Both the position numbers and the translations under genes were made by a program. DNA of 63,971 bases, counting the filler, from Reticulomyxa filosa (taxonomy: Eukaryota > Protista > Foraminifera): assembly GCA_000512085.1 (NCBI GenBank). It is 22 parts of 22 records of this genome, joined end to end, with 100 filler letters (N's around TTAATTAATTAA, not from the genome) between each part and the next. Parts side by side here need not be neighbours in the genome. Positions count along the whole stretch, not along the records: positions 20,849 to 35,056 come from ASPP01003623.1; 21 more parts are not named here. The stretch is one strand, 5' to 3'. The notes beneath the pieces were generated by a model that was not told the DNA's origin, ran no database searches, and was given only the letters and a program-made list of their open reading frames with translations. This document shows positions 23,400 through 35,056 of this stretch, piece after piece (the stretch's first letter is position 1; each line of letters begins with the position of its first letter).

Positions 23400-26300
23400 G
23401 CCCATGTTGCAACAATGTTTTCTTTCACCGTATTTCACCTTCAACACAATTGTCGAGTTTGGACTCACTAGGCAACGTTCAAATTTTCAAAATGCCAGTA
23501 ATTGGAATACACAACAGCATATGTGTTGTATCTTGAGGAATTAACAGCATATATGTTTGACCGATGTTCACAATCCGATACGAATGGTGGCATCAGCAAT
23601 GGAACAGTTAAATTGTCATAGTTGCACGATTGGTTAGAAATCGCTAATTGTGTTCACTCGCAGATAATCGTAGTTTGTCATAAGCAGATCATACTACGAT
23701 TATATATATATATTCAATCGACCATTCAGTGTGGTCAACTGAGTCATAAGCATCTTCACACATGCTATCCAAATACAAAGATTCATTGTTGTCACGTTCG
23801 GAATCATCGCTTGACGATTAATCTAATGATGATATATTTCCTCGCAAACATCGATGGCCAATATTGTATCGTTGATATCGTGAATTCCTTGCAATTCGTA
23901 TAATCCTTGCTCAAAGTTGTATGTCCTTTCAAAGCTAACCAAGTATTTACACTTGCCAGTAGTAACTTCGACTTCCCGACCCATCCTCGGTCTAATTCAG
24001 TTGTGAATCCATCATATCTTTGGCCATAAAGTCAATGCAAGTTAGTTGCAAGGAATTTGTAAAAATAATTTCTCCAATTACACTGGAACTTGGGTTAGTT
24101 GTTCAAACCGACTTCTCGCATACACACGACTTATTGGATATACGTACATCCTTGGAAGCTTTAAACAGTCGATATCTCCAATGTCCATTCAGCTTCATCC
24201 TTATTCCAGTGCATGCGGAAATGTGATGAGGATATTAGCAAATTGTAGCTGTTGGGCTTCCCGTTGTGCGAAGACTACTTGTTTGATCAGGTTGGTTTGC
24301 TTGTGGACTTTGTGTTGGTCTCGAAGAGGAGTTGAGCTGAATGTTGGACTATTGTTTGGGTGATGTTGTGAAATCTGTGGGATTGTTTGTTCGACTGTAT
24401 GTCGGACTATAAGTCGGGCTGTACGTAGGACTGAATGTGCGCTTATGTCGGACGTTGGTAGGAGAATTGGTTGAGCTTAGAGTTGGATTGTAATTCGTAG
24501 TATTTGTTGGACTTTCCGTCGGCTGATGTAGGACTATGTTGGCGAATGTTGGCGCATTTATTGGGCTGCCGTTGGTGCACTTACTGACTGTAAGCGGGAC
24601 TTTCCGTTGGATTATAATTCGGTTCGATGTCGGTGAATACGTCGGGCGTAGCGTTCGTTGGACTTGTTGGACTGTAAACATTGCATTTGTGGACTTGGTG
24701 TTGACTTTACGTTGATGTCCACTGCAAGAGGTGCGTTCGCTGGACTGAAAGTGGATGCATTCGTCGGGCTATATGTTGGATTGGCTGTTGGATAATGTTG
24801 GCGCATTTGTTGGTCTCTCCGTTGCGCTGTAGTGGTGCACCTGTTGGAATGAAGTTGGACAATAAATGGACTGCATGTTGGAGCATTGGTTGGATTTGGA
24901 GTCGACGTTTGTTGGACATAAGTTGCTCTCCGTTGGCCATACGTTGGAGCGTTTGTTGCGCTATCCTTGGGCTGATGTCGGACTGTCTGTTGTAGAATAA
25001 GTTGGCAGTATATGATAATGTGTTGGAAAATATTTGGACATTCGTTGGTGACTCCGTTGGAGCGGTTGGATTGTGCGTTGGGGCCAGTTGGTGAAAAAGG
25101 AAGTTCGACTCCCGTGGAAATGTAAGTTGGAAAGTCTGTCTATCGGGGAATATTGGCTGTTGGATAACACGTTGGAGCGCCAGCTGGTGAATACGTTGAG
25201 GTATAAGTCGGACTGTTTGTTGCAGCACCAGTTGGGGAATATGTTGGAATGTTAAAGCGCCGTTGGGAATAATTTGCTGTCCGTTGTCGAGTATGTGGTA
25301 CTCCGTTGGCAAAGCAGTCAGCGAGCGTTGCTGGATGTTATAATCCGTTAGAGAAAATGTTGGCGTTGGTAATAATTTGAAGCTATGTGGGGAATTAGTG
25401 AGAACGTTGGTGAGCGTTGATATCTCCGTTGGAATATCGTTGCAAATACGTTGGTAAAGTTGGTAGTATGTCGAGAAAATGCTAGTGCGTCCGTTGGTGG
25501 GTAGTACGGAAATATGTTGGTAACTGTTGACGAGTTAGTTGGTGACTCCGTTGGCACATTTGTTGATGAGTACGTTTGGCTGTATGTTGAACGCTCGTTG
25601 GTGATATGTTGGAATGTCGGGCGGTGTTAGGCGTCGTTGGCGAATACGTTAGTGAATATGTTAATGCAATTGCCAACAAATTATTCGCGCATTGATTAAG
25701 ACTCCGTTGGCGCTAAGTGGGACTGAGTTGGCGTTGGTGAATATGTTGGAGCCCCAGTTGAAAAGTTGGGAAAATGTTGGCGCCCCGTTGGCAAAAAAGT
25801 TGACTGCGTGTGTGCATTGGTCGTTGACTCCATTGGCGATTAGTGGGACTAAATGTCGGGCCTCGTTGGAAAATGAGTTGGCAAAATCAGCGATCCGTTG
25901 GAGTATTTGTTGGACCATAAGTCGGACTGTATGTTGGCGCATTAGTTGGATTTGGAAGCTGTTTGTTGAACAAAATCTGGCTCTCCGTTGGGCTTATGTC
26001 GCTTTGTCGGCTGTCTGTTGGAGGAAGTTGGAGCACCAGTTGGCGAGTGTGTTGGAGAATAGGTCAGGTCTCGTTGGCGATTGGGTCAGGAGTCAGTTGG
26101 AACACCAGCCGGGGATATGTCGGTGAGTACGTTGGAGCGCCGTTTGTGATCATTGATGAATGTTGGCAAGTTGGTTGGAGACGTTGGACTGTACGTTGGA
26201 GAGCCAGTTGGTGAATACGTTGGAGTCGCTGTTGGATTGTGTCTTAGTGCTTGTTGGAGCACCGTTTGGGGACATGTTGGACTGAATGTTTTAGCACCTG

Positions 26301-28055
26301 TTGGAAAATAAATTGTGGAATACGTTGGCGCACTGTTGGCGAAGCAGTCGACGTTGGACTAGATGTTAGAGCATTCGTTGGAAAAAATGTTAGCACTTGT
26401 TGGTGAATAAATTGGTGAATGGTTGATCATCAGTTGACTGGGTCGCATTTGTTGAGTACGTTGAGCGCTTGTTGGGGCATCAGTTGGATAAGGTTGGCCA
26501 GTGTCGGAGCGCATGTGGAGAATTGGATGAGACGTTGATGAATATGTTGGTATTCGTCGGAACACCCGTTAGCAAATAGGCTGATGAATGAGTTGGCGAC
26601 TTCGTTGATGCACTGTGACTCGTTGGCGTATTTGTTGGTGAGTCGTGGGGCTTTATGTTATAGCGCCGTTGGATATGTTGGAGAGAATGTTGGTGCAGTA
26701 GTCGAATAATGTTGTGATTGCATTAGTGCATTTGTTGACGACTCCGTTGGTGCATTCGTTGATGAAAAGTCAGCAGTATGCCGGACTATATGTTGGATGA
26801 AGGTTGGCGCATCCGTTGGCATTCGTTGGCGAAAGTTGGCGACTGCGTGGATGCATTGATCGGTGACTCCGTTGAGCATTTGTTGGTGAATAAGTTGGAG
26901 ACTCCATTGGCGCATTCCTTGATGAATAAGTTGGCGAGCACGTTGAACTAAATGTTGGGGCACCCGTTGGAAAATAGATTGGACAGAATTTCAGCGCATC
27001 CGTTGGGACATTATTGGCAAATAGTTCGAACGTTGGACATCAGTCGGTGAATGTGTTGGAGCTCCTGTTGGATACGAAATTGGGCTCAAATTGGATGTCT
27101 GGTTGTATCTTGTTTGGCTTTTTGTGAGATGCTTGGTTGTTTCGTTAGTTGCTTGGTGATAGCCTGTAAGTCAAAACGTATATTGTACATATTTTAGTCA
27201 AAAATACTATTAGTCGCACAAAAAACAAAACTTGGTTTGACACTAAGCACTGCGAAGATCGCCAATCCTTCAAGGTGATGACTTGGTTGTCATTGATAAC
27301 ATGTTGAGTTGAAGGTTTCAACTAGCAAATCATTGTAAGTGATATTTTAACAGGAACCACCAAAAGTTAGTCAATTTTTTTTGAATTTCGTCCAGTTGAC
27401 AAGTTTATTGTCATCACAGTCAAATATCAATTCCTGCCTAAAACATTATCTAGAAATCTTTGTACCACCATAACGCATTCATTCGATACCTTCTTTTAAT
27501 TCTCGCAAATAATGTACCATGTTTTCTGAAACGTCATCCAAATTGACTTGGACGCTCACGATCCAAAGTCCATGTTGCCCGTTTGACAATTAGTCCCGCA
27601 GTCGAAATAAATGAAGTTGGTGGATATGTTGGTGGTTTGTTGCGCCAAAATAGTTGTTTGACTGCATGGCAATACATTTGAATAAGCGATACTGGCTGAA
27701 TTAGCAAAGTTTGTTGGTTCAATGTACCAAATTTTGCCTGGTCTTCGCTGGTTGATGCGATCCATGTGAAGCACGTCGTTTTTGAGAACTCGACTGAAAG
27801 CATTTGGAAGTGAGGAATAAATGAATGGCGACGCCCATCTGTTTCCGTTTGGATTTGTCCATTTTCTGAATCAACAGCCACGAACGTAAGGAACTTTTGC
27901 CTGCCCAAGTCAATCAACTGTCCGGTAATGTAAATGTATACTGCCGCCTGCGATACCATAACCAATTCCATGCTGCTGTTAAATGTGTGCGTCAGTTGCA
28001 AGCCCACTTTGTCTGATTTGGGAAGTCGATACTCTTCCCGCCGTTGTCCACTCAA
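23400..28055 (-). pseudogene. Decayed gene for a large mucin-like protein with a PT-repeat stalk
   Basis: A globular exon (27534..28055) is followed by ~2.8 kb of SPTYSPT/NAPTESPT repeats in constantly shifting frames, then further broken coding sequence. Confidence 0.6.
24290..27100 (-). repeat. Degenerate 12-nt-period array encoding xxPT tetrapeptides
   Basis: Dense recurring gttgg/gtcgg (CCAAC/CCGAC on the minus strand). Fragments translate to FSPTYSPTYSPTYS and PTESPTN. Confidence 0.85.
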
Positions 28056-29420: not shown

Positions 29421-31549
29421 TTACCAGTCGATAATTTTGTAGTCTTTCAAAAATACTCCACAGAAAAGATGTCCTTTCAACCCACACCAAATTGGATGCA
29501 AAACTCTAGCAGCACCATCCACCTCGTCAAGAGGTGGATGAAAAGCAAACTCACTTCTTTCGTCGTGCTCTTCTCCTTGGAGTGTATGTTTTGAGCCCGG
29601 AAGACCTAAGATTTTGGCTTTGACCCTTTTTTTCAAGGGAAGTTCATCAGTGACCCAGCCAGTGTCAACACTGGTCATATAGCAATTGTGATCTTTCGCC
29701 ATTTGCTGTCCGGACGTTCTGGTCAGCATGTTCAGTGCCGCTTTGGCCATATTGGTGTGAGGATGAGTGCCCCTTTTATTGTGATGAAAGCAGCCCTCCA
29801 TTGCGGAGACATTGATAATGAAGCTAGTCTCTGTGGTGCCTGCGCGAGACAATAGCGGCAGCAAATGATTTATCAATAAAAACGGAGCGAATTGGTTTAC
29901 AACGATTGTTTCCATCGCCTATTGGTTTATAAAATATAAATATATAAATATATATGTGTACATATATACTATATATATACCATATATGAATAAATTAAAT
30001 TACCTCAATGGGATGAACTTCTCCCACTTTGGCAGTCCACGAGTTGTGATCTCGTAAATCCAAAGGCTGACTGTGTTCGTCATAATTGCCAAAAGTGGTG
30101 ATGACTTTGTCCACCATTGTTTTGGTGGTGGTTAAATCAAGGTTTTTCTTCCAAGTTTCCTGGGATAGCTCATTGTTGGAAGATTCGGTTGAACTTTTAT
30201 AAACTAAGTATATAAGTGCATATAAACATATATACATATATACATATATATATGTATGTAAAACTCTTAATTCAACTTTGCAATGTCATCAAATTATCAT
30301 TTGTTTTTTTTTTTTTAAAAAAAAAGTAAACCAGTCAGTTGGTCGATATCTTTCAAATAGGAAGACGAGCCCAAGACCATTTGCTGTGAAATGTTAGCAG
30401 GCAAGGATTTGGTAAGATAGTTGGTTTCGATGGCGACGACGTCTTGATAAAAGGAAGGGTCTTTTCGAACGGTGGTGGCGGCGTTGTTAATGAGGAAATC
30501 GATCTTGGTGAAACGCGACAGCGTCCATTGGATGAACTTCATGACGCTCTTCAAATCCAAGAAGTCGACACCGTATACACACAGACGGTCTTTCCATTGA
30601 TCAAAGTCGGACTCCTGACTATATCGCAGCACGGCATACTTTGGGAAGCGCGTGGTCACCACCACGAAGCACTGACGTCGCAACAACTTCAACACGATCT
30701 CATAGCCGATCTTGATGCGTCCTCCGGTCACAATCGCCACTCTGCCACTCAGATCCTCGCTGTCCAAGCGCTGCTTGTAGTTCTCATCGCCACACGTCTC
30801 GCACATTTGGTCGTAAAAGTGGTGCAGCTTCCAATACTTTTGCTTACAAATGTAACAACACCGCACAAAGTTTAGCTCGCTCTTTGCCTCGTCTAGTGAC
30901 TGTCGCAGCTGTGACAAGTACTCGGATCTTGCCATATTTTCATTGTCATTGGTATTCATATTGGCATTCATATTTGTTTCGATATTAATATTCATGCTTG
31001 TATTCTCATTTATACTTTCATTTTTATTATTTCCATTTTTATTTTCATTTGCATTTCCATTTGTATTTGCATTTGCGGTCGAATTATTTTGATCGTTCTT
31101 CCTTTTCTTACCAGGTCGCCTTCTGCTTATGGGCTGTTATTGATCAAATGGATATGTGCATGTGCATATGCATGTGCGCGTGTTGGGATGACATATACAC
31201 ATGCAAAGATATATGTGTATATATATGTATACATATGTACTTACTTGTGTATTGTTTGCAATGGCTGACTTCCTGTCAACGGTGGTCCCGTGGCATTGCA
31301 GCATTTGTTCGCGTGACAATGAGTCCAAGATTTCATCTTTCTTTTGTTTGTTTGTTTGTTTATTTGATTGTGTTGAATAGACAACAGAGCAAACACCTCT
31401 CGCCCTTCCTCTGTATGTGTGAACAAATAGGAAAGGGGAGGAGGGAAAAAAACGACAAAACTTGTGTTTTGACAACAGTCGGGCAAAATTGCTTTTGCAA
31501 AGGATTGCGATACACACTTTGAACAGATGTAATGTCTGTATCATCATCA

Positions 31550-31605
<56 letters not shown>

Positions 31606-32719
31606 GCCTTGCTTATTCGTATAGCGTTGTTCTTGTTCGTGTTCACTTTCAGTGTCATGTTCACTTTTCTGTCCGAGCTCAACCCCTCCTTCTTGAAGTG
31701 GTAATTGTTGCTGTTGTTGCTGTTGTTGTTGTTGTTGTCGATGATGTTTTCGACTACGCTGTATCTTCTTCTTAATCTCTTGACACAGGTTTGCGGGGAC
31801 GTAGTTGTTATGAAGTCGCACGATGGGCCATTTGGCAAGCGGAAACTCGTCAATGAGCCGCTGCAAGTACAGAGCGCCTTGAGTCGAGACGCAGTTGCGT
31901 TCGACGGACAGCTTGTCAAACTTGGTGTCGTTGTCGTTGTCGTTGCCGTTGTTGTTGTTGACGGCAATCCAAGCCAGACTGTCGGCCAAGGCCTGAAAGC
32001 CGACATCGCCAATGTGATTGGGCAAGGCACCGACCGCAACAGTGTTTGCAGCATAGCCTTTTGTACATCAAATCATGTCATGCATTTTACAAAAAAGGAT
32101 CAAATATATATATATATATGTATGTATATATACCTAAATCTAAGTAAATAAAGTTGGGATGCGAGCCAATGGCAAAAGCCAAGGCCTGTGCTCCGGCATC
32201 GCCGATGGAACAGCTTCGCAAGCTCAAAACTTTGAGCTGTTTGGCATGACATACAGCCTTGGCAATGGCGATAGCGCCGTCGTCGCCGAGAGGATTGGAT
32301 GTGAGATACAGTTCGGTGATGTGCGAGCAATGGACGAGCAGTCTGGTGAGATGCTGCGCCGCAAATGCGCCGGTCAGACCCAACGCGCCCAAGAACAGAC
32401 GCTGCAGTCCGCTCTCGCGGTTGCTCAGAATCGCGTCGATGATATAGCTCAGCCTTTTTCGCCGATTCCCGTGGACACCAGGTCCAATGTCCGCAGATGC
32501 GTGTTCACTTTCAGCATGTCGCCGAGTTCCTTCGCGCCCTTCCATCCGAGTGGATTGCGCTTCAGCCACAGTCCACGCACTGTCTTGTTGTTCTTCAATG
32601 CCTGCGACAGGGCCGTCGTACCGTCCGTTTTTATCAGGTTGCATCCTAAAAATATTGTCTCTACTTTGTTGTTCGCTTCGATCATCTCTGCCACTGCCTT
32701 GAAAAAATTGTAAAGTATT

Positions 32720-32750
<31 letters not shown>

Positions 32751-33821
32751 TAAATAAAATAAAATAAAATAAAAAATAAATATAAAAAAAAAAGTTGTTA
32801 CCTTTGCGCCGTGGTCACCAATGCCATTCGCTCCCAATAACAATGCTTGTATGCACTGGTTGTGCTTCATCACTTGGGCGATGCTGGTGGCGTGATTGGG
32901 CCCCAGCTTTTGCTTGCACAAGTCCAGACGCTGTGACCCGTCTTGATCGCGAATCAGCGTGCCCACTTTAAACGCGGTCGTGTTTGCCAATGGGGTGTTG
33001 TTCTTGATCATCTCTATGCACTCCTCCAAGTCTCGTTCCGAACATGTTACCAATACTTGTTCTCGGAACATGTGGTCGTCAATGTTCTTTGCTGCGTGCA
33101 CGGTCACTTCTTTTTTTTCTTCTTCTTCTTCTCTTTCTTTTACCTCGCCCATCTCAAGCGCCATTCGTGTCTCTGTTTCCTCATACCCCACTTCGGCCTC
33201 TGTCAGCTTTCGAAACTTTTCCGACACCTTTTTGCGTTCCATTCTTTGTTGGCGGATCCCTGTTTGCGCTTGTTTTTCAAAATCTTTCATTCGCAAGTGG
33301 TACATTTCCAATTGTTTTCTTTTTTTTTTTTTTTTGATTGGGTGTGGATTGGATAGTAATTGATTGGTTGATAAAAAAAAAAAAAAAAAGGTTGTTAATA
33401 CCATGAGGACATTTTTTTTTTTTGTGCAAAAGAGCACTCCCCTTTTGGCTAGTTTTTTTTTTAAAAAAAAAAACAACAAAAGCTCAGACTTGGCGTGTAT
33501 TTTCCCCGCTTCTCGACATTGGGTCACGTAGTCACCCAGTGTTTTGATGTATGGCACAAATTTCTTAAACGTCGGCTCATTCAACAGCTTTGGCTTGTTG
33601 CACAGCTTCAATAACACCTTCTCACATATCAAAATGTCTTCCAGTCGTAGGCTATCTTTGTTGCTGGGGTTCTTCCATTGCATCTCTTGTGGAGGCTTTA
33701 TTGCTTCTCGTTTCTCCTCTTCCACTTGCGGTCTCAAATCTGGACCGACGTCGGGCTCATTTTCCGAAGAATTTTCTGCGGAAATCTTTTTTTTTTTTGA
33801 TACATCCCCCCCCTCTCTCAT
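29421..33821 (-). CDS. Multi-exon fusion protein: helical N-terminus, RNI-like LRR domain, poly-Q/N linker, CxxC...CxxC Zn ribbon, atypical short-chain dehydrogenase/reductase
   Basis: LRR motifs: RLDLCKQKLGP, LLLGANGIGDHGAK, GLWLKRNPLG, ELYLTSNPLGDDGA. SDR motifs: CYICK..HHFYDQMCETCG, VAIVTGGRIKIG, TTRFP, LINNAA.TVR, NVSAMEG, HPHTNMAKAALNM, VDTGWVTDE, FLKDY..IDW*. Phase-compatible GT-AG introns link the exons from the LRR through to the SDR (e.g. 32133-32058, 30331-30204, 30003-29919). There is one 1-nt frame break at ~32455. The true start is uncertain, with a possible upstream exon to ~34100. Confidence 0.8.
31548..31605. repeat. (ATT)n microsatellite encoding poly-Asn in the LRR-SDR linker
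   Basis: Pure ATT run in frame with ORF 31360..32025. Confidence 0.9.
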
Positions 33822-34839
33822 TCTTTCGTTCAAAAATATGACAGAAAGGACTGCATATTCATTTAAAGAGGAGGGGAAAAAAAAAACATGCCTTGGGAAA
33901 AAGCCTTGAAGAAGATTTGTCAATCCATTCCCATTCCAAATGGTGAATTAATAGTTTGGTCTCTTTTTTCGTGTGCAGCTCTGCCAAAGTCGGCTTTTCA
34001 TTAACCAGTACATAAAAATTATCGCCTTCTCTTAGATCTTCCAGACAATATTTGATATGACTGGACATAATCCGCCTTGCTTGATGGAAACCTTTCTTCA
34101 AAAAAAAAAAGATCTCAATGACATGTTCGTCAAACGAGTTTTTTAAAAGTTCTGTCTTTCGCCGTTGTTCGTTTAGTGTTTATTCATTGTCTTGAAGCAG
34201 TTCCTTGTTTCTCTTTGTTAAGTAAGCCACAAGCCGAAGAACAACCGATTGAAATAATTGGTTTAAGTACTCTTAACTGATTTGTATTACTAGTTTTATT
34301 TCTAACGACGGTAGCATTTAGTCTCAAAAGCTTGAATAGTCCAACAACAAAAATCGTTTTCTTATTTTTGTTCTCATGCAGTGTTTTTGTATTTCCGACA
34401 TGCGCGTTGAATGTTGTAAATGCCAATGGGAGAAGAAAAAAAAAAAAACGACAACAAACAACAAAATGTTGATTTTCGTTAAAAAAAGTTTGAGACGACT
34501 ATATTAACTGAGAAAGATTATGTTTGTGTAATAACAAACACAAAATCGATATGACTATGTTATTATAGCAATTACAAAAAAAAAAAAAAAAAGTGACATT
34601 ACACTCCGAGAAAAGGTTCGAATATTCGGATTAGTGGAACAAACATACTTTCATACAAAAATAAAATTTTTTTTTTTTTTTTTTTTTTTTGTTGCTCCCT
34701 AATGTTATATTTATAGTTTTCTTTCTCCCCTTTTCCCTCCCGTTTTCTCTTCAGACAAGGAAAATGACCCAAAGTTGCCAAACGGAACTAAGGATTTAAT
34801 AGACATTACACGCCGTTTAGGCCGGACGTGTATGATACG

Positions 34840-35015: not shown

Positions 35016-35056
<41 letters not shown>

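What the first reader, a model, noticed from the sequence alone, without database searches (positions are those of the whole stretch)
29421..33821. A bacterial-type LRR module appears inserted inside a Zn-ribbon atypical SDR: candidate sensor-enzyme fusion
Seen in sequence: one minus-strand spliced frame can be built, with phase-compatible GT-AG introns through the LRR-to-SDR portion (VVKTQ|KDEILDS...ANNTQ|PISRRRPG...CCYICK). It runs helical N-terminus, LRR array, poly-Q/N linker, CxxC..CxxC, SDR. Recalled knowledge, not searched: the SDR half resembles a bacterial family whose own N-terminal extension carries 'L..C..VL..L' and 'D......TGIR..R' motifs just before the Zn ribbon. Here those motifs (LEDILICEKVLLKL; KDFEKQAQTGIRQQR) lie upstream of the LRR. 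The LRR resembles standalone actinobacterial/cyanobacterial 'gala'-type proteins from start (F..GT...DG..RLDLCKQ.LGP) to their usual C-terminus (D....SVYR). Inference: a whole LRR protein was nested into the SDR, giving a ligand-gated oxidoreductase or receptor-like enzyme built from two bacterial-type parts and since intronised.
Basis: partly seen in the sequence, partly recalled or inferred. Interest (0 to 1): 0.8.

Follow-up and report, generated by a model that had tools for sequence, protein, structure and literature searches.

The report
LRR partner nested inside Zn-ribbon SDR
A protist (probably foraminiferal) gene appears to encode, in one chain, a zinc-ribbon dehydrogenase-like enzyme with a complete leucine-rich-repeat protein inserted into it; in many bacteria these same two proteins are separate neighbouring genes, so they probably work together.

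Summary
On the minus strand, 33821-29421, eight GT-AG-bounded, phase-compatible exons encode four parts in order: the N-terminal extension ('ext') typical of a Zn-ribbon atypical SDR family, a complete RNI-type LRR module, a CxxC..CxxC ribbon, and the SDR.

- **Nesting:** an ext profile built from 116 family members hits only the segment upstream of the LRR.
- **Relative:** a metagenome relative (L002) has the same order. Its ext and LRR sit in one 760-aa ORF that abuts the SDR ORF.
in 14 bacterial genomes from at least seven phyla, the homologous LRR protein (about 380-430 aa) lies immediately downstream of a gene of this SDR family. It has the same N-cap and the same C-terminal SVYR motif. 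Planctomycetota/Myxococcota carry a different fusion, LRR-ext-ribbon-SDR.
- **Reading:** the window gene is a nested Rosetta-stone fusion of a conserved two-gene module.

Caveats:
- No RNA evidence could be obtained.
- A one-base frameshift interrupts the LRR at 32452-32449 (assembly error or pseudogene).
- The LRR-to-SDR joins in the window rest on predicted introns.
- Function is unknown, and 'ligand-gated' is untested.
- The SDR family is pan-eukaryotic as well as bacterial, not specifically bacterial.

The parts
33895..34068 (-). Possible exon 0 or upstream small ORF (MSSHIKY...EWEWIDKSSSRLFP). It is conserved upstream of the gene in relative L002.
   Evidence: BLASTP against L002:214-438 gives 41% identity over 51 aa, E 8e-14. 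No significant Pfam family. L002 has a clean 75-nt GT-AG link to the next exon. In the window no convincing canonical link was found.
33490..33821 (-). Exon 1, from the first in-frame ATG. Holds ext motif 1 (LEDILICEKVLLKL..LLNEPT).
   Evidence: Sequence; ext profile alignment; exon statistics.
33319..33489 (-). Intron 1: 171 nt, GT..AG, stop-free and a multiple of 3, so it reads through in the raw ORF (poly-T/poly-A).
   Evidence: With the intron removed, the motif-1 to motif-2 spacing is 57 aa, against 63-66 aa in L002 and Bolivina P0022.
32802..33318 (-). Exon 2. Holds ext motif 2 (KDFEKQAQTGIRQQR), an acidic spacer, and the LRR N-cap and first repeat (FKVGTLIRDQDGSQRLDLCKQKLGP..) in one uninterrupted frame.
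   Evidence: BLASTP of its C-terminal part to bacterial LRR residues ~14-100, E 1e-12 to 1e-17.
33084..33668 (-). Region matched by the SDR-family N-extension profile (includes intron 1).
   Evidence: hmmsearch with a profile of 116 family extensions: 24.0 bits, the only hit above threshold in the piece. The best of 500 shuffles scored 10 bits.
31507..33110 (-). Complete RNI-type LRR module, from N-cap helix to the SVYR motif. It is interrupted by introns 2 and 3, one frameshift and a poly-Q/poly-N insert.
   Evidence: Pfam LRR_6; alignment A1; collinear BLASTP hits of the four exon pieces to bacterial partner LRRs; end motifs compared.
32449..32460 (-). Frameshift site (..GGC GAA AAA GGC TGA..). 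The frame of exon 3 stops at TGA 32451-32449. The homologous reading LSYIIDAIL.. starts at CTG 32452-32450, which shares base 32452. One base is therefore missing, next to an A5 run.
   Evidence: Collinearity without a gap to P0087 (GIGLEGCREIINAL) and to L002 and to bacterial LRRs. No GT..AG pair that could remove the shift.
32134..32697 (-). Exon 3 (LRR repeats), in two frames because of the frameshift.
   Evidence: Piece 32697-32452 is 46-54% identical to bacterial LRR residues ~95-176 (E to 1e-28). Piece 32449-32135 matches residues ~178-280.
31462..32057 (-). Exon 4: last LRRs, C-terminal tail with poly-Q/poly-N, SVQSVYR, then 15 more residues.
   Evidence: The exon 3/4 join gives YLDLG|YAANTVAVGALPNHIG, matching bacterial P0087 YLDLGFAPNTELIGSVPNRL. 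SVYR motif compared.
31245..31340 (-). Exon 5: 96 nt, phase 0/0, optional. No homolog found.
   Evidence: No similarity to the L002 linker or to the ext profile. E4 to E6 direct splicing is also in phase.
30332..31133 (-). Exon 6: basic and Asn-rich linker, Zn ribbon, first half of the SDR (TGGRIKIGY, NNAA).
   Evidence: adh_short E 1.6e-9. 44-56% identity to the family. A stop codon lies directly upstream of the acceptor and the first ATG comes only at 30995.
30792..30860 (-). Zn ribbon: CCYIC..HHFYDQMCETC.
   Evidence: Sequence. The motif is conserved in all homologs shown.
30004..30203 (-). Exon 7: variable insert of the SDR, ending in the conserved DLRDHNSW..VHPIE.
   Evidence: The same segment is present in P0004, P0020 and P0022.
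29421..29918 (-). Exon 8: second half of the SDR, with stop codon 29423-29421. Holds NVSAMEG, HPHTNMAK (29765-29742), DTGW and the C-terminal FLKDYKIIDW.
   Evidence: adh_short E 3.6e-4. Motifs are shared with the family. His aligns with the catalytic Tyr of classical SDRs.

Best explanation
This is one intron-containing eukaryotic gene, probably foraminiferal, of about 1,200 codons. It is a nested fusion of two proteins that in bacteria are separate but adjacent, probably co-transcribed genes.

The two partners:
1. A Zn-ribbon atypical SDR with a helical N-terminal extension. It has a Rossmann core, NNAA, Ser and Lys, but His in place of the catalytic Tyr (motif HPHTNMAK).
2. An RNI-type LRR protein of about 380-430 aa.

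In this gene the entire LRR protein, from N-cap to its C-terminal SVYR motif, lies in the normally short, length-variable linker between the extension and the Zn ribbon.

Shown:
- the domain order;
- the homology of each part;
- the bacterial gene pairing;
- the alternative bacterial fusion order;
- conservation of the nested order in a second organism.

Inferred:
- the two modules form a functional complex, with the LRR horseshoe as the binding or regulatory subunit of an NAD(P)-binding SDR, and the fusion makes this a single chain;
- the exons are spliced into one mRNA;
- the frameshift at 32452-32449 is an assembly error or a very recent lesion, because every family motif downstream of it is intact.

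Substrate and physiological role are unknown.
For: **Architecture in the window.**
- LRR_6 and adh_short hits on collinear minus-strand ORFs.
- Seven AT-rich GT-AG introns with compatible phases.
- Ext motif 2 and the LRR N-cap share one exon.

**Nesting.**
- The ext profile built from 116 family members scores 24 bits on the window, upstream of the LRR, against a shuffle maximum of 10 bits.
- It scores 47 bits on L002 residues 20-162, also upstream of the LRR.
- It scores 52 bits on bacterial P0087 residues 416-543, downstream of the LRR.
- In 110 family proteins the distance from ext to ribbon is 1 aa at the median and 104 aa at most.

**Relative L002.**
- One 760-aa ORF carries ext plus LRR plus a basic tail.
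- It abuts the SDR ORF, and a phase-compatible intron of about 150 nt joins them. There is no room for a separate promoter.

**Bacterial pairing.**
- Thirteen of the 14 best bacterial LRR hits have a gene of this SDR family directly upstream (gaps of about 0-170 nt, several overlapping). They come from Planctomycetota, Abditibacteriaceae, Cyanobacteriota, Armatimonadota, Chloroflexota, Bacteroidota, Actinomycetota and Ca. Uabimicrobium. The 14th is a fusion.
- No third gene is conserved around the pair.
- The same pair occurs in Gloeothece verrucosa PCC 7822.

**Other fusion.**
- P0087/L083 have the order LRR-ext-ribbon-SDR.
- An ESM Atlas cluster of 64 bacterial proteins carries adh_short plus LRR_6.

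**Whole-module insertion.**
- The bacterial LRRs start with FPRGT..DGRLDLCKQNLGP and end 4-17 aa after I.SVYR.
- The window has both motifs, and its exons are collinear with residues ~14-312 of the bacterial proteins.

**SDR half intact.** All family motifs are present.
Against:
- In the window, the LRR-to-SDR connection depends on predicted introns 4 and 5. The intervening exon 5 and the exon-6 N-part have no significant similarity to L002's linker.
- The LRR frame is broken by a one-base frameshift.
- An ATG at 30995 could start a separate ribbon-SDR protein.
- Only two instances of the nested order were found, the window and L002. The word-based search for more was swamped by generic LRR proteins.
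- The physical interaction of LRR and SDR is inferred only from gene order and fusions.
- None of 80 other bacterial loci of the SDR family had this LRR within 8 kb, so the partnership holds for a subfamily only.
Confidence: 0.7

Rival explanations
1. There are two adjacent same-strand genes, not one: an ext-LRR gene ending at the stop at about 31360, and a ribbon-SDR gene starting at ATG 30995. This would be a gene fission, or a never-completed fusion. The in-phase introns 4 and 5 would then be coincidental.
For: - Exon 4's frame runs on to a stop at 31360 if unspliced.
- An ATG at 30995 precedes the ribbon by 45 codons.
- Exon 5 and the linker have no detectable homologs.
- A phase match has a chance probability of about 1 in 3 per junction.
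Against: - The ext would be separated from its SDR. In 110 of 110 other family members the two are contiguous.
- In L002 the ext-LRR ORF and the SDR ORF abut or overlap, with a clean phase-compatible intron and no intergenic space.
- Only about 230-370 nt would be left for a terminator plus a promoter.
- The open frame of exon 6 extends 46 codons upstream of the ATG, exactly to an AG acceptor that follows a stop codon.
Confidence: 0.15
2. The locus is a pseudogene. The one-base frameshift in the LRR at 32452-32449 is real, translation stops after about 3 LRRs, and the downstream LRR and SDR exons are a decaying relic.
For: - A stop at 32451-32449 lies in the frame set by exons 1-3, and no intron can remove it.
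- No expression data are available.
Against: - Downstream of the shift there are about 2.4 kb of exons with no further stops or shifts. All family motifs are intact: LRR consensus, ribbon, TGGRIKIGY, NNAA, HPHTNMAK, DTGW, FLKDY..DW.
- The site adjoins an A5 homopolymer, a typical place for an assembly or base-calling error.
Confidence: 0.2
3. One reading: a ligand-gated oxidoreductase or receptor-like enzyme. The LRR would sense a ligand and switch the SDR's catalysis, and the gene would be assembled from two unrelated bacterial-type parts.
For: - LRR horseshoes are binding modules (established knowledge).
- The nested position would allow allosteric coupling (inference).
- The architecture is confirmed.
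Against: - The parts are not unrelated. They are conserved operon partners. The LRR is therefore more simply a dedicated subunit of the SDR than an independent ligand sensor.
- There is no signal peptide or transmembrane evidence for a receptor.
- The catalytic Tyr is replaced by His in the whole family, so even the oxidoreductase activity is unproven.
- The SDR family is not specifically bacterial.
Confidence: 0.15
4. The whole SDR+LRR module was transferred from a bacterium and later rearranged in the protist. The alternative would be that a resident eukaryotic SDR captured a bacterial LRR gene.
For: - The LRR exons are 46-54% identical to cyanobacterial and planctomycete partner LRRs, more than to eukaryotic RNI-like LRRs at about 36%.
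- An AU test does not reject a clade of the foraminifer-like SDRs plus the operon-type SDRs (p = 0.42).
Against: - In the SDR tree, the window groups (SH-aLRT 96) with un-nested Bolivina and metagenome SDRs. The operon-type SDRs lie across a branch with support 98.
- At 10 columns that separate LRR-linked from unlinked SDRs, the window and L002 carry the linked state at 1 and the unlinked state at 3-4.
Confidence: 0.3

Closest known systems
Bacterial two-gene cassette: ext-Zn-ribbon SDR followed by an RNI-type LRR protein (e.g. Gloeothece verrucosa PCC 7822, CP002198.1, SDR 461 aa then LRR 388 aa; also Waterburya, Limnoglobus, Streptomyces sp. NPDC005302, Virgisporangium aurantiacum)
   Same: The same two protein families with the same landmark motifs: ext, the HHFY(D/H) ribbon and HPHTNMAK in the SDR; FPRGT..DGRLDLCKQ.LGP and I.SVYR in the LRR.
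   Different: In bacteria these are two separate genes in the order SDR then LRR. In the window they form one intronised gene with the LRR inside the SDR's N-terminal linker. NCBI names the LRR 'ribonuclease inhibitor' or 'hypothetical protein', JGI names it 'RanGAP', and the SDR is a generic 'SDR family oxidoreductase'. As far as I could find, the pairing itself is not described.
Bacterial fusion LRR-ext-ribbon-SDR (P0087, 924 aa; Planctomycetota MAG L083, 926 aa; ESM Atlas cluster of 64, mostly Myxococcota)
   Same: A single chain holding the same LRR module, ext, ribbon and SDR.
   Different: The LRR is N-terminal and ext stays next to the ribbon. This is not nested, has no introns, and implies an independent fusion event.
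Canonical eukaryotic ext-ribbon-SDR proteins (Bolivina argentea P0022, 537 aa; metagenomic P0040; Phytophthora ramorum H3GL43 'Oxidoreductase')
   Same: The window's SDR exon groups with P0022, P0019 and P0040 (SH-aLRT 96). Ext and the C-terminal motifs are near-identical in style.
   Different: These proteins have no LRR. Ext is at most 104 aa from the ribbon.
Metagenome scaffold L002 (ENA ERZ23488602, scaffold_9112)
   Same: The same nested order ext-LRR-ribbon-SDR and a conserved upstream small ORF. The SDR is 51% and the LRR pieces 37-46% identical to the window (BLASTP).
   Different: There are no introns inside its ext-LRR part, and only one short intron before the SDR. It lacks the 'YAANTVAVG' insert that the window shares with P0087.
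Classical SDRs and eukaryotic RNI-like LRR proteins (ribonuclease inhibitor, RanGAP, NLRC3, LRRC34)
   Same: The fold families: adh_short Rossmann core and LRR_6 repeats.
   Different: The catalytic Tyr is replaced by His, and the glycine motif is TGxxxKIG. The LRR carries the bacterial-partner end motifs. No evidence ties it to RNase or Ran.

Membership tests
Zn-ribbon atypical SDR family with N-terminal extension (uncharacterised; core = Pfam PF00106 adh_short) | adh_short Rossmann core | tested here: met
   PF00106 at E 1.6e-9 on exon 6 (above the gathering score) and 3.6e-4 on exon 8.
Zn-ribbon atypical SDR family with N-terminal extension (uncharacterised; core = Pfam PF00106 adh_short) | CxxC..HHFYD..CxxC ribbon about 15 residues before the TGGR(I/V)KIGY strand | tested here: met
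   Window 30860-30792. The same motif is present in all homologs printed. phmmer gives E to 2e-56 with 593 representatives below 1e-30.
Zn-ribbon atypical SDR family with N-terminal extension (uncharacterised; core = Pfam PF00106 adh_short) | HPHTNMAK (His at the Tyr position), DTGW, and the C-terminal FLKDY..DW | tested here: met
   Exon 8 sequence, family sequences, and the alignment of P0004 to PDB 3rkr.
Zn-ribbon atypical SDR family with N-terminal extension (uncharacterised; core = Pfam PF00106 adh_short) | N-terminal extension (profile of 116 members) lying directly before the ribbon | tested here: not met
   The extension is present (24 bits; shuffles at most 10) but lies roughly 870-880 residues upstream of the ribbon in the exon model, with the LRR in between. 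In 110 other members the distance is at most 104 aa. This displacement is the finding itself.
Bacterial SDR-partner RNI-type LRR protein ('ribonuclease inhibitor' in NCBI naming) | LRR_6 repeats collinear over the whole ~380-aa protein | tested here: met
   Pfam LRR_6. The four exon pieces match bacterial residues ~14-100, 95-176, 178-280 and 288-312.
Bacterial SDR-partner RNI-type LRR protein ('ribonuclease inhibitor' in NCBI naming) | N-cap F.(R/V)GT...DG.RLDLCKQ.LG and C-terminal I.SVYR | tested here: met
   Bacterial set: the N-cap is present in 13 of 13 and SVYR-type ends in 11 of 13. The window has FKVGTLIRDQDGSQRLDLCKQKLGP and SVQSVYR.
Bacterial SDR-partner RNI-type LRR protein ('ribonuclease inhibitor' in NCBI naming) | Standalone gene immediately downstream of the SDR gene | tested here: not met
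   In the window the module is embedded in the SDR reading frame. In bacteria it is standalone in 13 of 14 loci plus Gloeothece.
Classical SDR (catalytic Asn-Ser-Tyr-Lys tetrad) | YxxxK active-site motif | tested here: not met
   The family has H-T-N-M-A-K, with His aligned to the Tyr of PDB 3rkr. The window has the same string at 29765-29742.
Ribonuclease inhibitor / RanGAP (functional sense) | Binding of RNase A-type nucleases, or GAP activity on Ran | not testable with these tools
   Only database names point this way. No sequence feature specific to either function was examined.
Known anti-phage defence systems (PADLOC) | Match to any PADLOC model | tested here: not met
   No hits for P0087 or for the Waterburya/Streptomyces pair members.

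The most novel reading that the evidence does not exclude
The Zn-ribbon SDR and the RNI-type LRR are the two subunits of a previously unrecognised, widely conserved complex found in bacteria of at least seven phyla. They have been welded into one chain at least twice independently and in different topologies: LRR-first in Planctomycetota/Myxococcota, and nested in foraminifer-like protists. On this reading, the protist version arose when a resident eukaryotic SDR captured a bacterial partner gene into its own linker.
Probability: 0.45. Interest if true: 0.65.

Novelty: new variant of a known kind. Interest (0 to 1): 0.55.

Why it matters
Both families are large and uncharacterised. The SDR family has hundreds of 50%-identity clusters. 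The LRR family has hundreds of members that carry misleading names such as 'ribonuclease inhibitor' and 'RanGAP'.

A conserved operon plus two independent fusion topologies is classical Rosetta-stone evidence that the two proteins act together. This gives a concrete, cheap experiment: co-express a cyanobacterial pair, then test for a complex and for NAD(P)H binding.

For protist genomics, this is a clean case of domain insertion. A whole protein has been placed inside another protein's linker. It possibly involves a bacterial donor gene that has since acquired spliceosomal introns.

It is not a new kind of molecular system, and no function can yet be named.

Tried and rejected
- **Word-based search for more nested relatives.** Searching with L002's 760-aa ORF was swamped by generic LRR proteins and did not even recover P0087. 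Its blank therefore says nothing.
- **ESM Atlas with P0168.** It returned only generic RNI-like clusters.
- **Exon 5 as a degenerate second copy of ext motif 1** (KDEILDS.. versus EDEILEC..). Rejected: the profile score is -1.7 bits.
- **Basic stretch PISRRRPGKK versus L002's PRSRRRSKK as a cross-link between the ORFs.** This is visible by eye only and is not significant by BLASTP.
- **A third conserved gene in the bacterial cassette.** None was found.
- **Defence-system and curated-family names.** No PADLOC hit, and no NCBIfam model reaches its cut-off.
- **Origin of the SDR half.** The tree and the AU test are inconclusive.
- **First alignment for the bacterial-genome scan.** The first alignment (A1, with partial window rows) had no conserved stretch usable for the genome-contig scan. 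It was replaced by A2.
- **Structure prediction.** A mixed alignment for predicting the P0087 fusion (A3) misaligned the LRR-only rows (15-18% identity), so no prediction was run.
- **Spliced protein.** Every search used single exons or ORFs by reference.

Full report
**What is in the sequence.**

The piece is AT-rich eukaryotic DNA: exons are 41-55% GC and introns 7-39%. On the minus strand between 33821 and 29421, a series of open frames carries recognisable domains:
- Pfam LRR_6 on 32694-32452 and 32644-32090;
- adh_short on 30995-30318 and 29915-29424.

Reading the strand and locating junctions gives eight exons: E1 33821-33490, E2 33318-32802, E3 32697-32134, E4 32057-31462, E5 31340-31245, E6 31133-30332, E7 30203-30004, E8 29918-29421. 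They are separated by seven GT..AG introns of 76-171 nt, all with compatible phases.

Homology supports several junctions:
- Removing intron 1 restores the family's spacing between the two extension motifs.
- The E3/E4 join reproduces an unusual stretch (YLDLG + YAANTVAVGALPNH) that matches bacterial P0087 (YLDLGFAPNTELIGSVPNR).
- The E6/E7/E8 joins reproduce the family's DLR..NSW and ..E(A/L)..VN..APF segments.

The first junction is 31461/31341.

**The frameshift.**

The frame of E3 ends in TGA at 32451-32449. The homologous reading (LSYIIDAIL..) continues from 32452 in another frame, so one base is missing beside an A5 run.

Alignment to P0087, L002 and 13 bacterial LRRs is gapless across the site. 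No intron can explain it. Everything downstream is intact, so I favour an assembly error or a very recent lesion.

**The SDR half.**

The exon with the ribbon finds 18 relatives by word search. An exhaustive phmmer search finds 2,794 representatives, 593 of them below 1e-30.

The family is defined by these features:
- a CxxC..HHFYD..CxxC ribbon;
- TGGR(I/V)KIGY;
- NNA(A/C)QT;
- NVSAMEG;
- HPHTNMAK;
- DTGW;
- a C-terminal FLKDY..DW.

The window has all of them. Against a classical SDR structure, the second His of HPH aligns with the catalytic Tyr, so 'atypical SDR' is justified. No solved structure and no curated NCBIfam model covers the family.

Most members are 400-700 aa, with a 100-300-aa N-terminal extension. 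The family is not specifically bacterial. Named members come from Bolivina argentea (Foraminifera; the closest, at 53-56% identity), Phytophthora ramorum, Amoeba proteus, Cyanophora, Choanoeca and Amorphochlora. The window is therefore probably foraminiferal or at least rhizarian. That is an inference, not a demonstration.

**Is the LRR really nested?**

I built a profile from the N-terminal extensions of 116 family members and searched all ORF pieces of the genomic piece. The only hit is the ORF upstream of the LRR: 24 bits despite the in-frame intron, against a best of 10 bits from 500 shuffles.

The second motif and the LRR N-cap lie in one uninterrupted exon, so their order is a fact of the sequence. 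Among 110 family proteins that have both the extension and the ribbon, the extension ends 1 aa (median) and at most 104 aa before the ribbon. In the window and its relative, some 650-880 residues intervene. Exon 5 and the exon-6 N-part do not match the profile.

**A second organism with the same order.**

The SDR relative P0020 (51% identity) lies on metagenome scaffold L002. There, a single 760-aa ORF carries the extension (47 bits, residues 20-162), the full LRR module and a basic tail. It abuts the SDR ORF. A phase-compatible GT..AG intron of about 150 nt joins the two, and there is no space for a separate promoter. This is the strongest available evidence that ext-LRR-ribbon-SDR is one gene.

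For the window itself, the LRR-to-SDR link rests on three points:
- predicted introns 4 and 5, or a direct in-phase E4-E6 splice;
- the fact that exon 6 is open exactly from an AG acceptor that follows a stop codon;
- the argument that an extension without its SDR would otherwise be unprecedented.

Linker similarity between the window and L002 is not significant.

**What the LRR is.**

A pattern scan of one genome per bacterial species with an LRR alignment (A2) returned 22 loci. In 13 of the 14 best, a standalone LRR protein of 372-524 aa lies immediately downstream of a gene of this same Zn-ribbon SDR family, extension included. The two are on the same strand, and the gaps range from overlapping to about 170 nt.

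The organisms are Planctomycetota, Abditibacteriaceae, Cyanobacteriota, Chthonomonadaceae, Ca. Uabimicrobium, Chloroflexaceae, Saprospiraceae, Streptomyces and Virgisporangium. No third gene is conserved around the pair. The complete genome of Gloeothece verrucosa PCC 7822 shows the same pair, with independent gene calls.

These LRR proteins begin with FPRGT..DGRLDLCKQNLGP after a ~50-aa cap and end 4-17 residues after I.SVYR. The window's LRR exons are collinear with them and up to 54% identical. That is more than to eukaryotic RNI-like LRRs.

The family has hundreds of members, named 'ribonuclease inhibitor', 'hypothetical protein' or 'RanGAP'. These names are by fold, not by function.

The partnership holds for a subfamily only. 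None of 80 other bacterial or metagenomic loci of the SDR family had this LRR within 8 kb.

**Other fusions.**

- The 14th locus (Planctomycetota MAG L083) and P0087 on a compact bacterial contig are single proteins with the order LRR-ext-ribbon-SDR.
- An ESM Atlas cluster of 64 bacterial proteins, mostly Myxococcota, has adh_short plus LRR_6.
- One metagenomic protein (P0259) is ext-ribbon-half SDR-LRR, probably a deletion across the operon.

So the same two modules are found as neighbours, fused LRR-first, and nested. By the Rosetta-stone argument they very probably act together. That is inference; nothing here shows a physical contact.

**Origin.**

In a tree of the ribbon plus first SDR half (exon 6 only for the window), the window groups with Bolivina P0019/P0022, L002's P0020 and P0040 (SH-aLRT 96). 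P0022 and P0040 are canonical un-nested proteins. The operon-type SDRs lie across a branch with support 98.

An AU test does not reject uniting the foraminifer-like and operon-type sequences (p = 0.42). At ten columns that separate LRR-linked from unlinked SDRs, the window and L002 carry the linked state once and the unlinked state three to four times.

This leans towards a resident eukaryotic SDR that acquired a bacterial-type partner LRR in its linker. Co-transfer of the whole module is not excluded.

**How it most likely works.**

A single polypeptide reproduces a two-subunit bacterial system:
- An NAD(P)-binding Rossmann enzyme carries a Zn ribbon and a helical N-terminal arm.
- An RNI-type LRR horseshoe serves as its dedicated binding or regulatory partner.
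- The insertion site is the one place in the SDR that is naturally variable in length.

Whether the SDR is a true oxidoreductase (His for Tyr), what it acts on, and what the LRR binds are all unknown.

**Limits and rules observed.**

- No RNA data were available.
- Only two nested instances are known.
- The organism is not identified.
- The spliced protein was never joined, searched or folded. All searches used single exons or ORFs by reference.
- No structure was predicted, because the only usable mixed alignment (A3) was misaligned.

**Verdict.**

The finding is enriched by the discovery that the two parts are conserved operon partners. It is a new domain arrangement of known, uncharacterised families, of moderate interest.

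Noticed in passing
window 34068-33895 (-) and L002 214-438 (+): A small ORF (..EGD..EWEWID..S.RLFP) is conserved directly upstream of the gene in both organisms (41% identity over 51 aa, E 8e-14). It may be the true first exon: L002 has a clean 75-nt in-phase intron to the next exon. Or it may be an upstream small gene. There is only a faint MBT-like hint in Pfam.
   Followed up: partly
window 24349-27348: A stretch of about 3 kb has strong strand asymmetry (GC skew about +0.4, GC 45-49%). Several Pro/Thr/Gln-rich minus-strand ORFs of 90-200 aa (e.g. SPTYSPTYSPTYS) have no Pfam match. It could be a repetitive, possibly frameshifted or intron-rich gene.
   Followed up: partly
P0019 (Bolivina argentea transcript, 424 aa): This is the closest SDR relative of the window (56% identity). 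It carries an unrelated ~190-aa N-terminal region in place of the extension or an LRR. The N-terminal side of this SDR therefore seems to be a hotspot for domain swapping in Foraminifera, unless the transcript model is chimeric.
   Followed up: no
L107 933-2888 (P0259, 651 aa): A bacterial metagenomic protein has the extension, ribbon and first half of the SDR running straight into the partner LRR. It lacks the HPHTNMAK half. It looks like a deletion across the SDR-LRR operon, or an assembly artefact.
   Followed up: partly
window 31549-31605 and 31028-31076: An (ATT)19 microsatellite encodes the poly-Asn run inside the LRR tail. A 12/24-nt repeat encodes the NANxN low-complexity linker before the ribbon. 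Both are length-variable elements within coding sequence.
   Followed up: no
window 35020-35056: A run of 37 T lies at the edge of the piece. It is possibly an assembly boundary.
   Followed up: no
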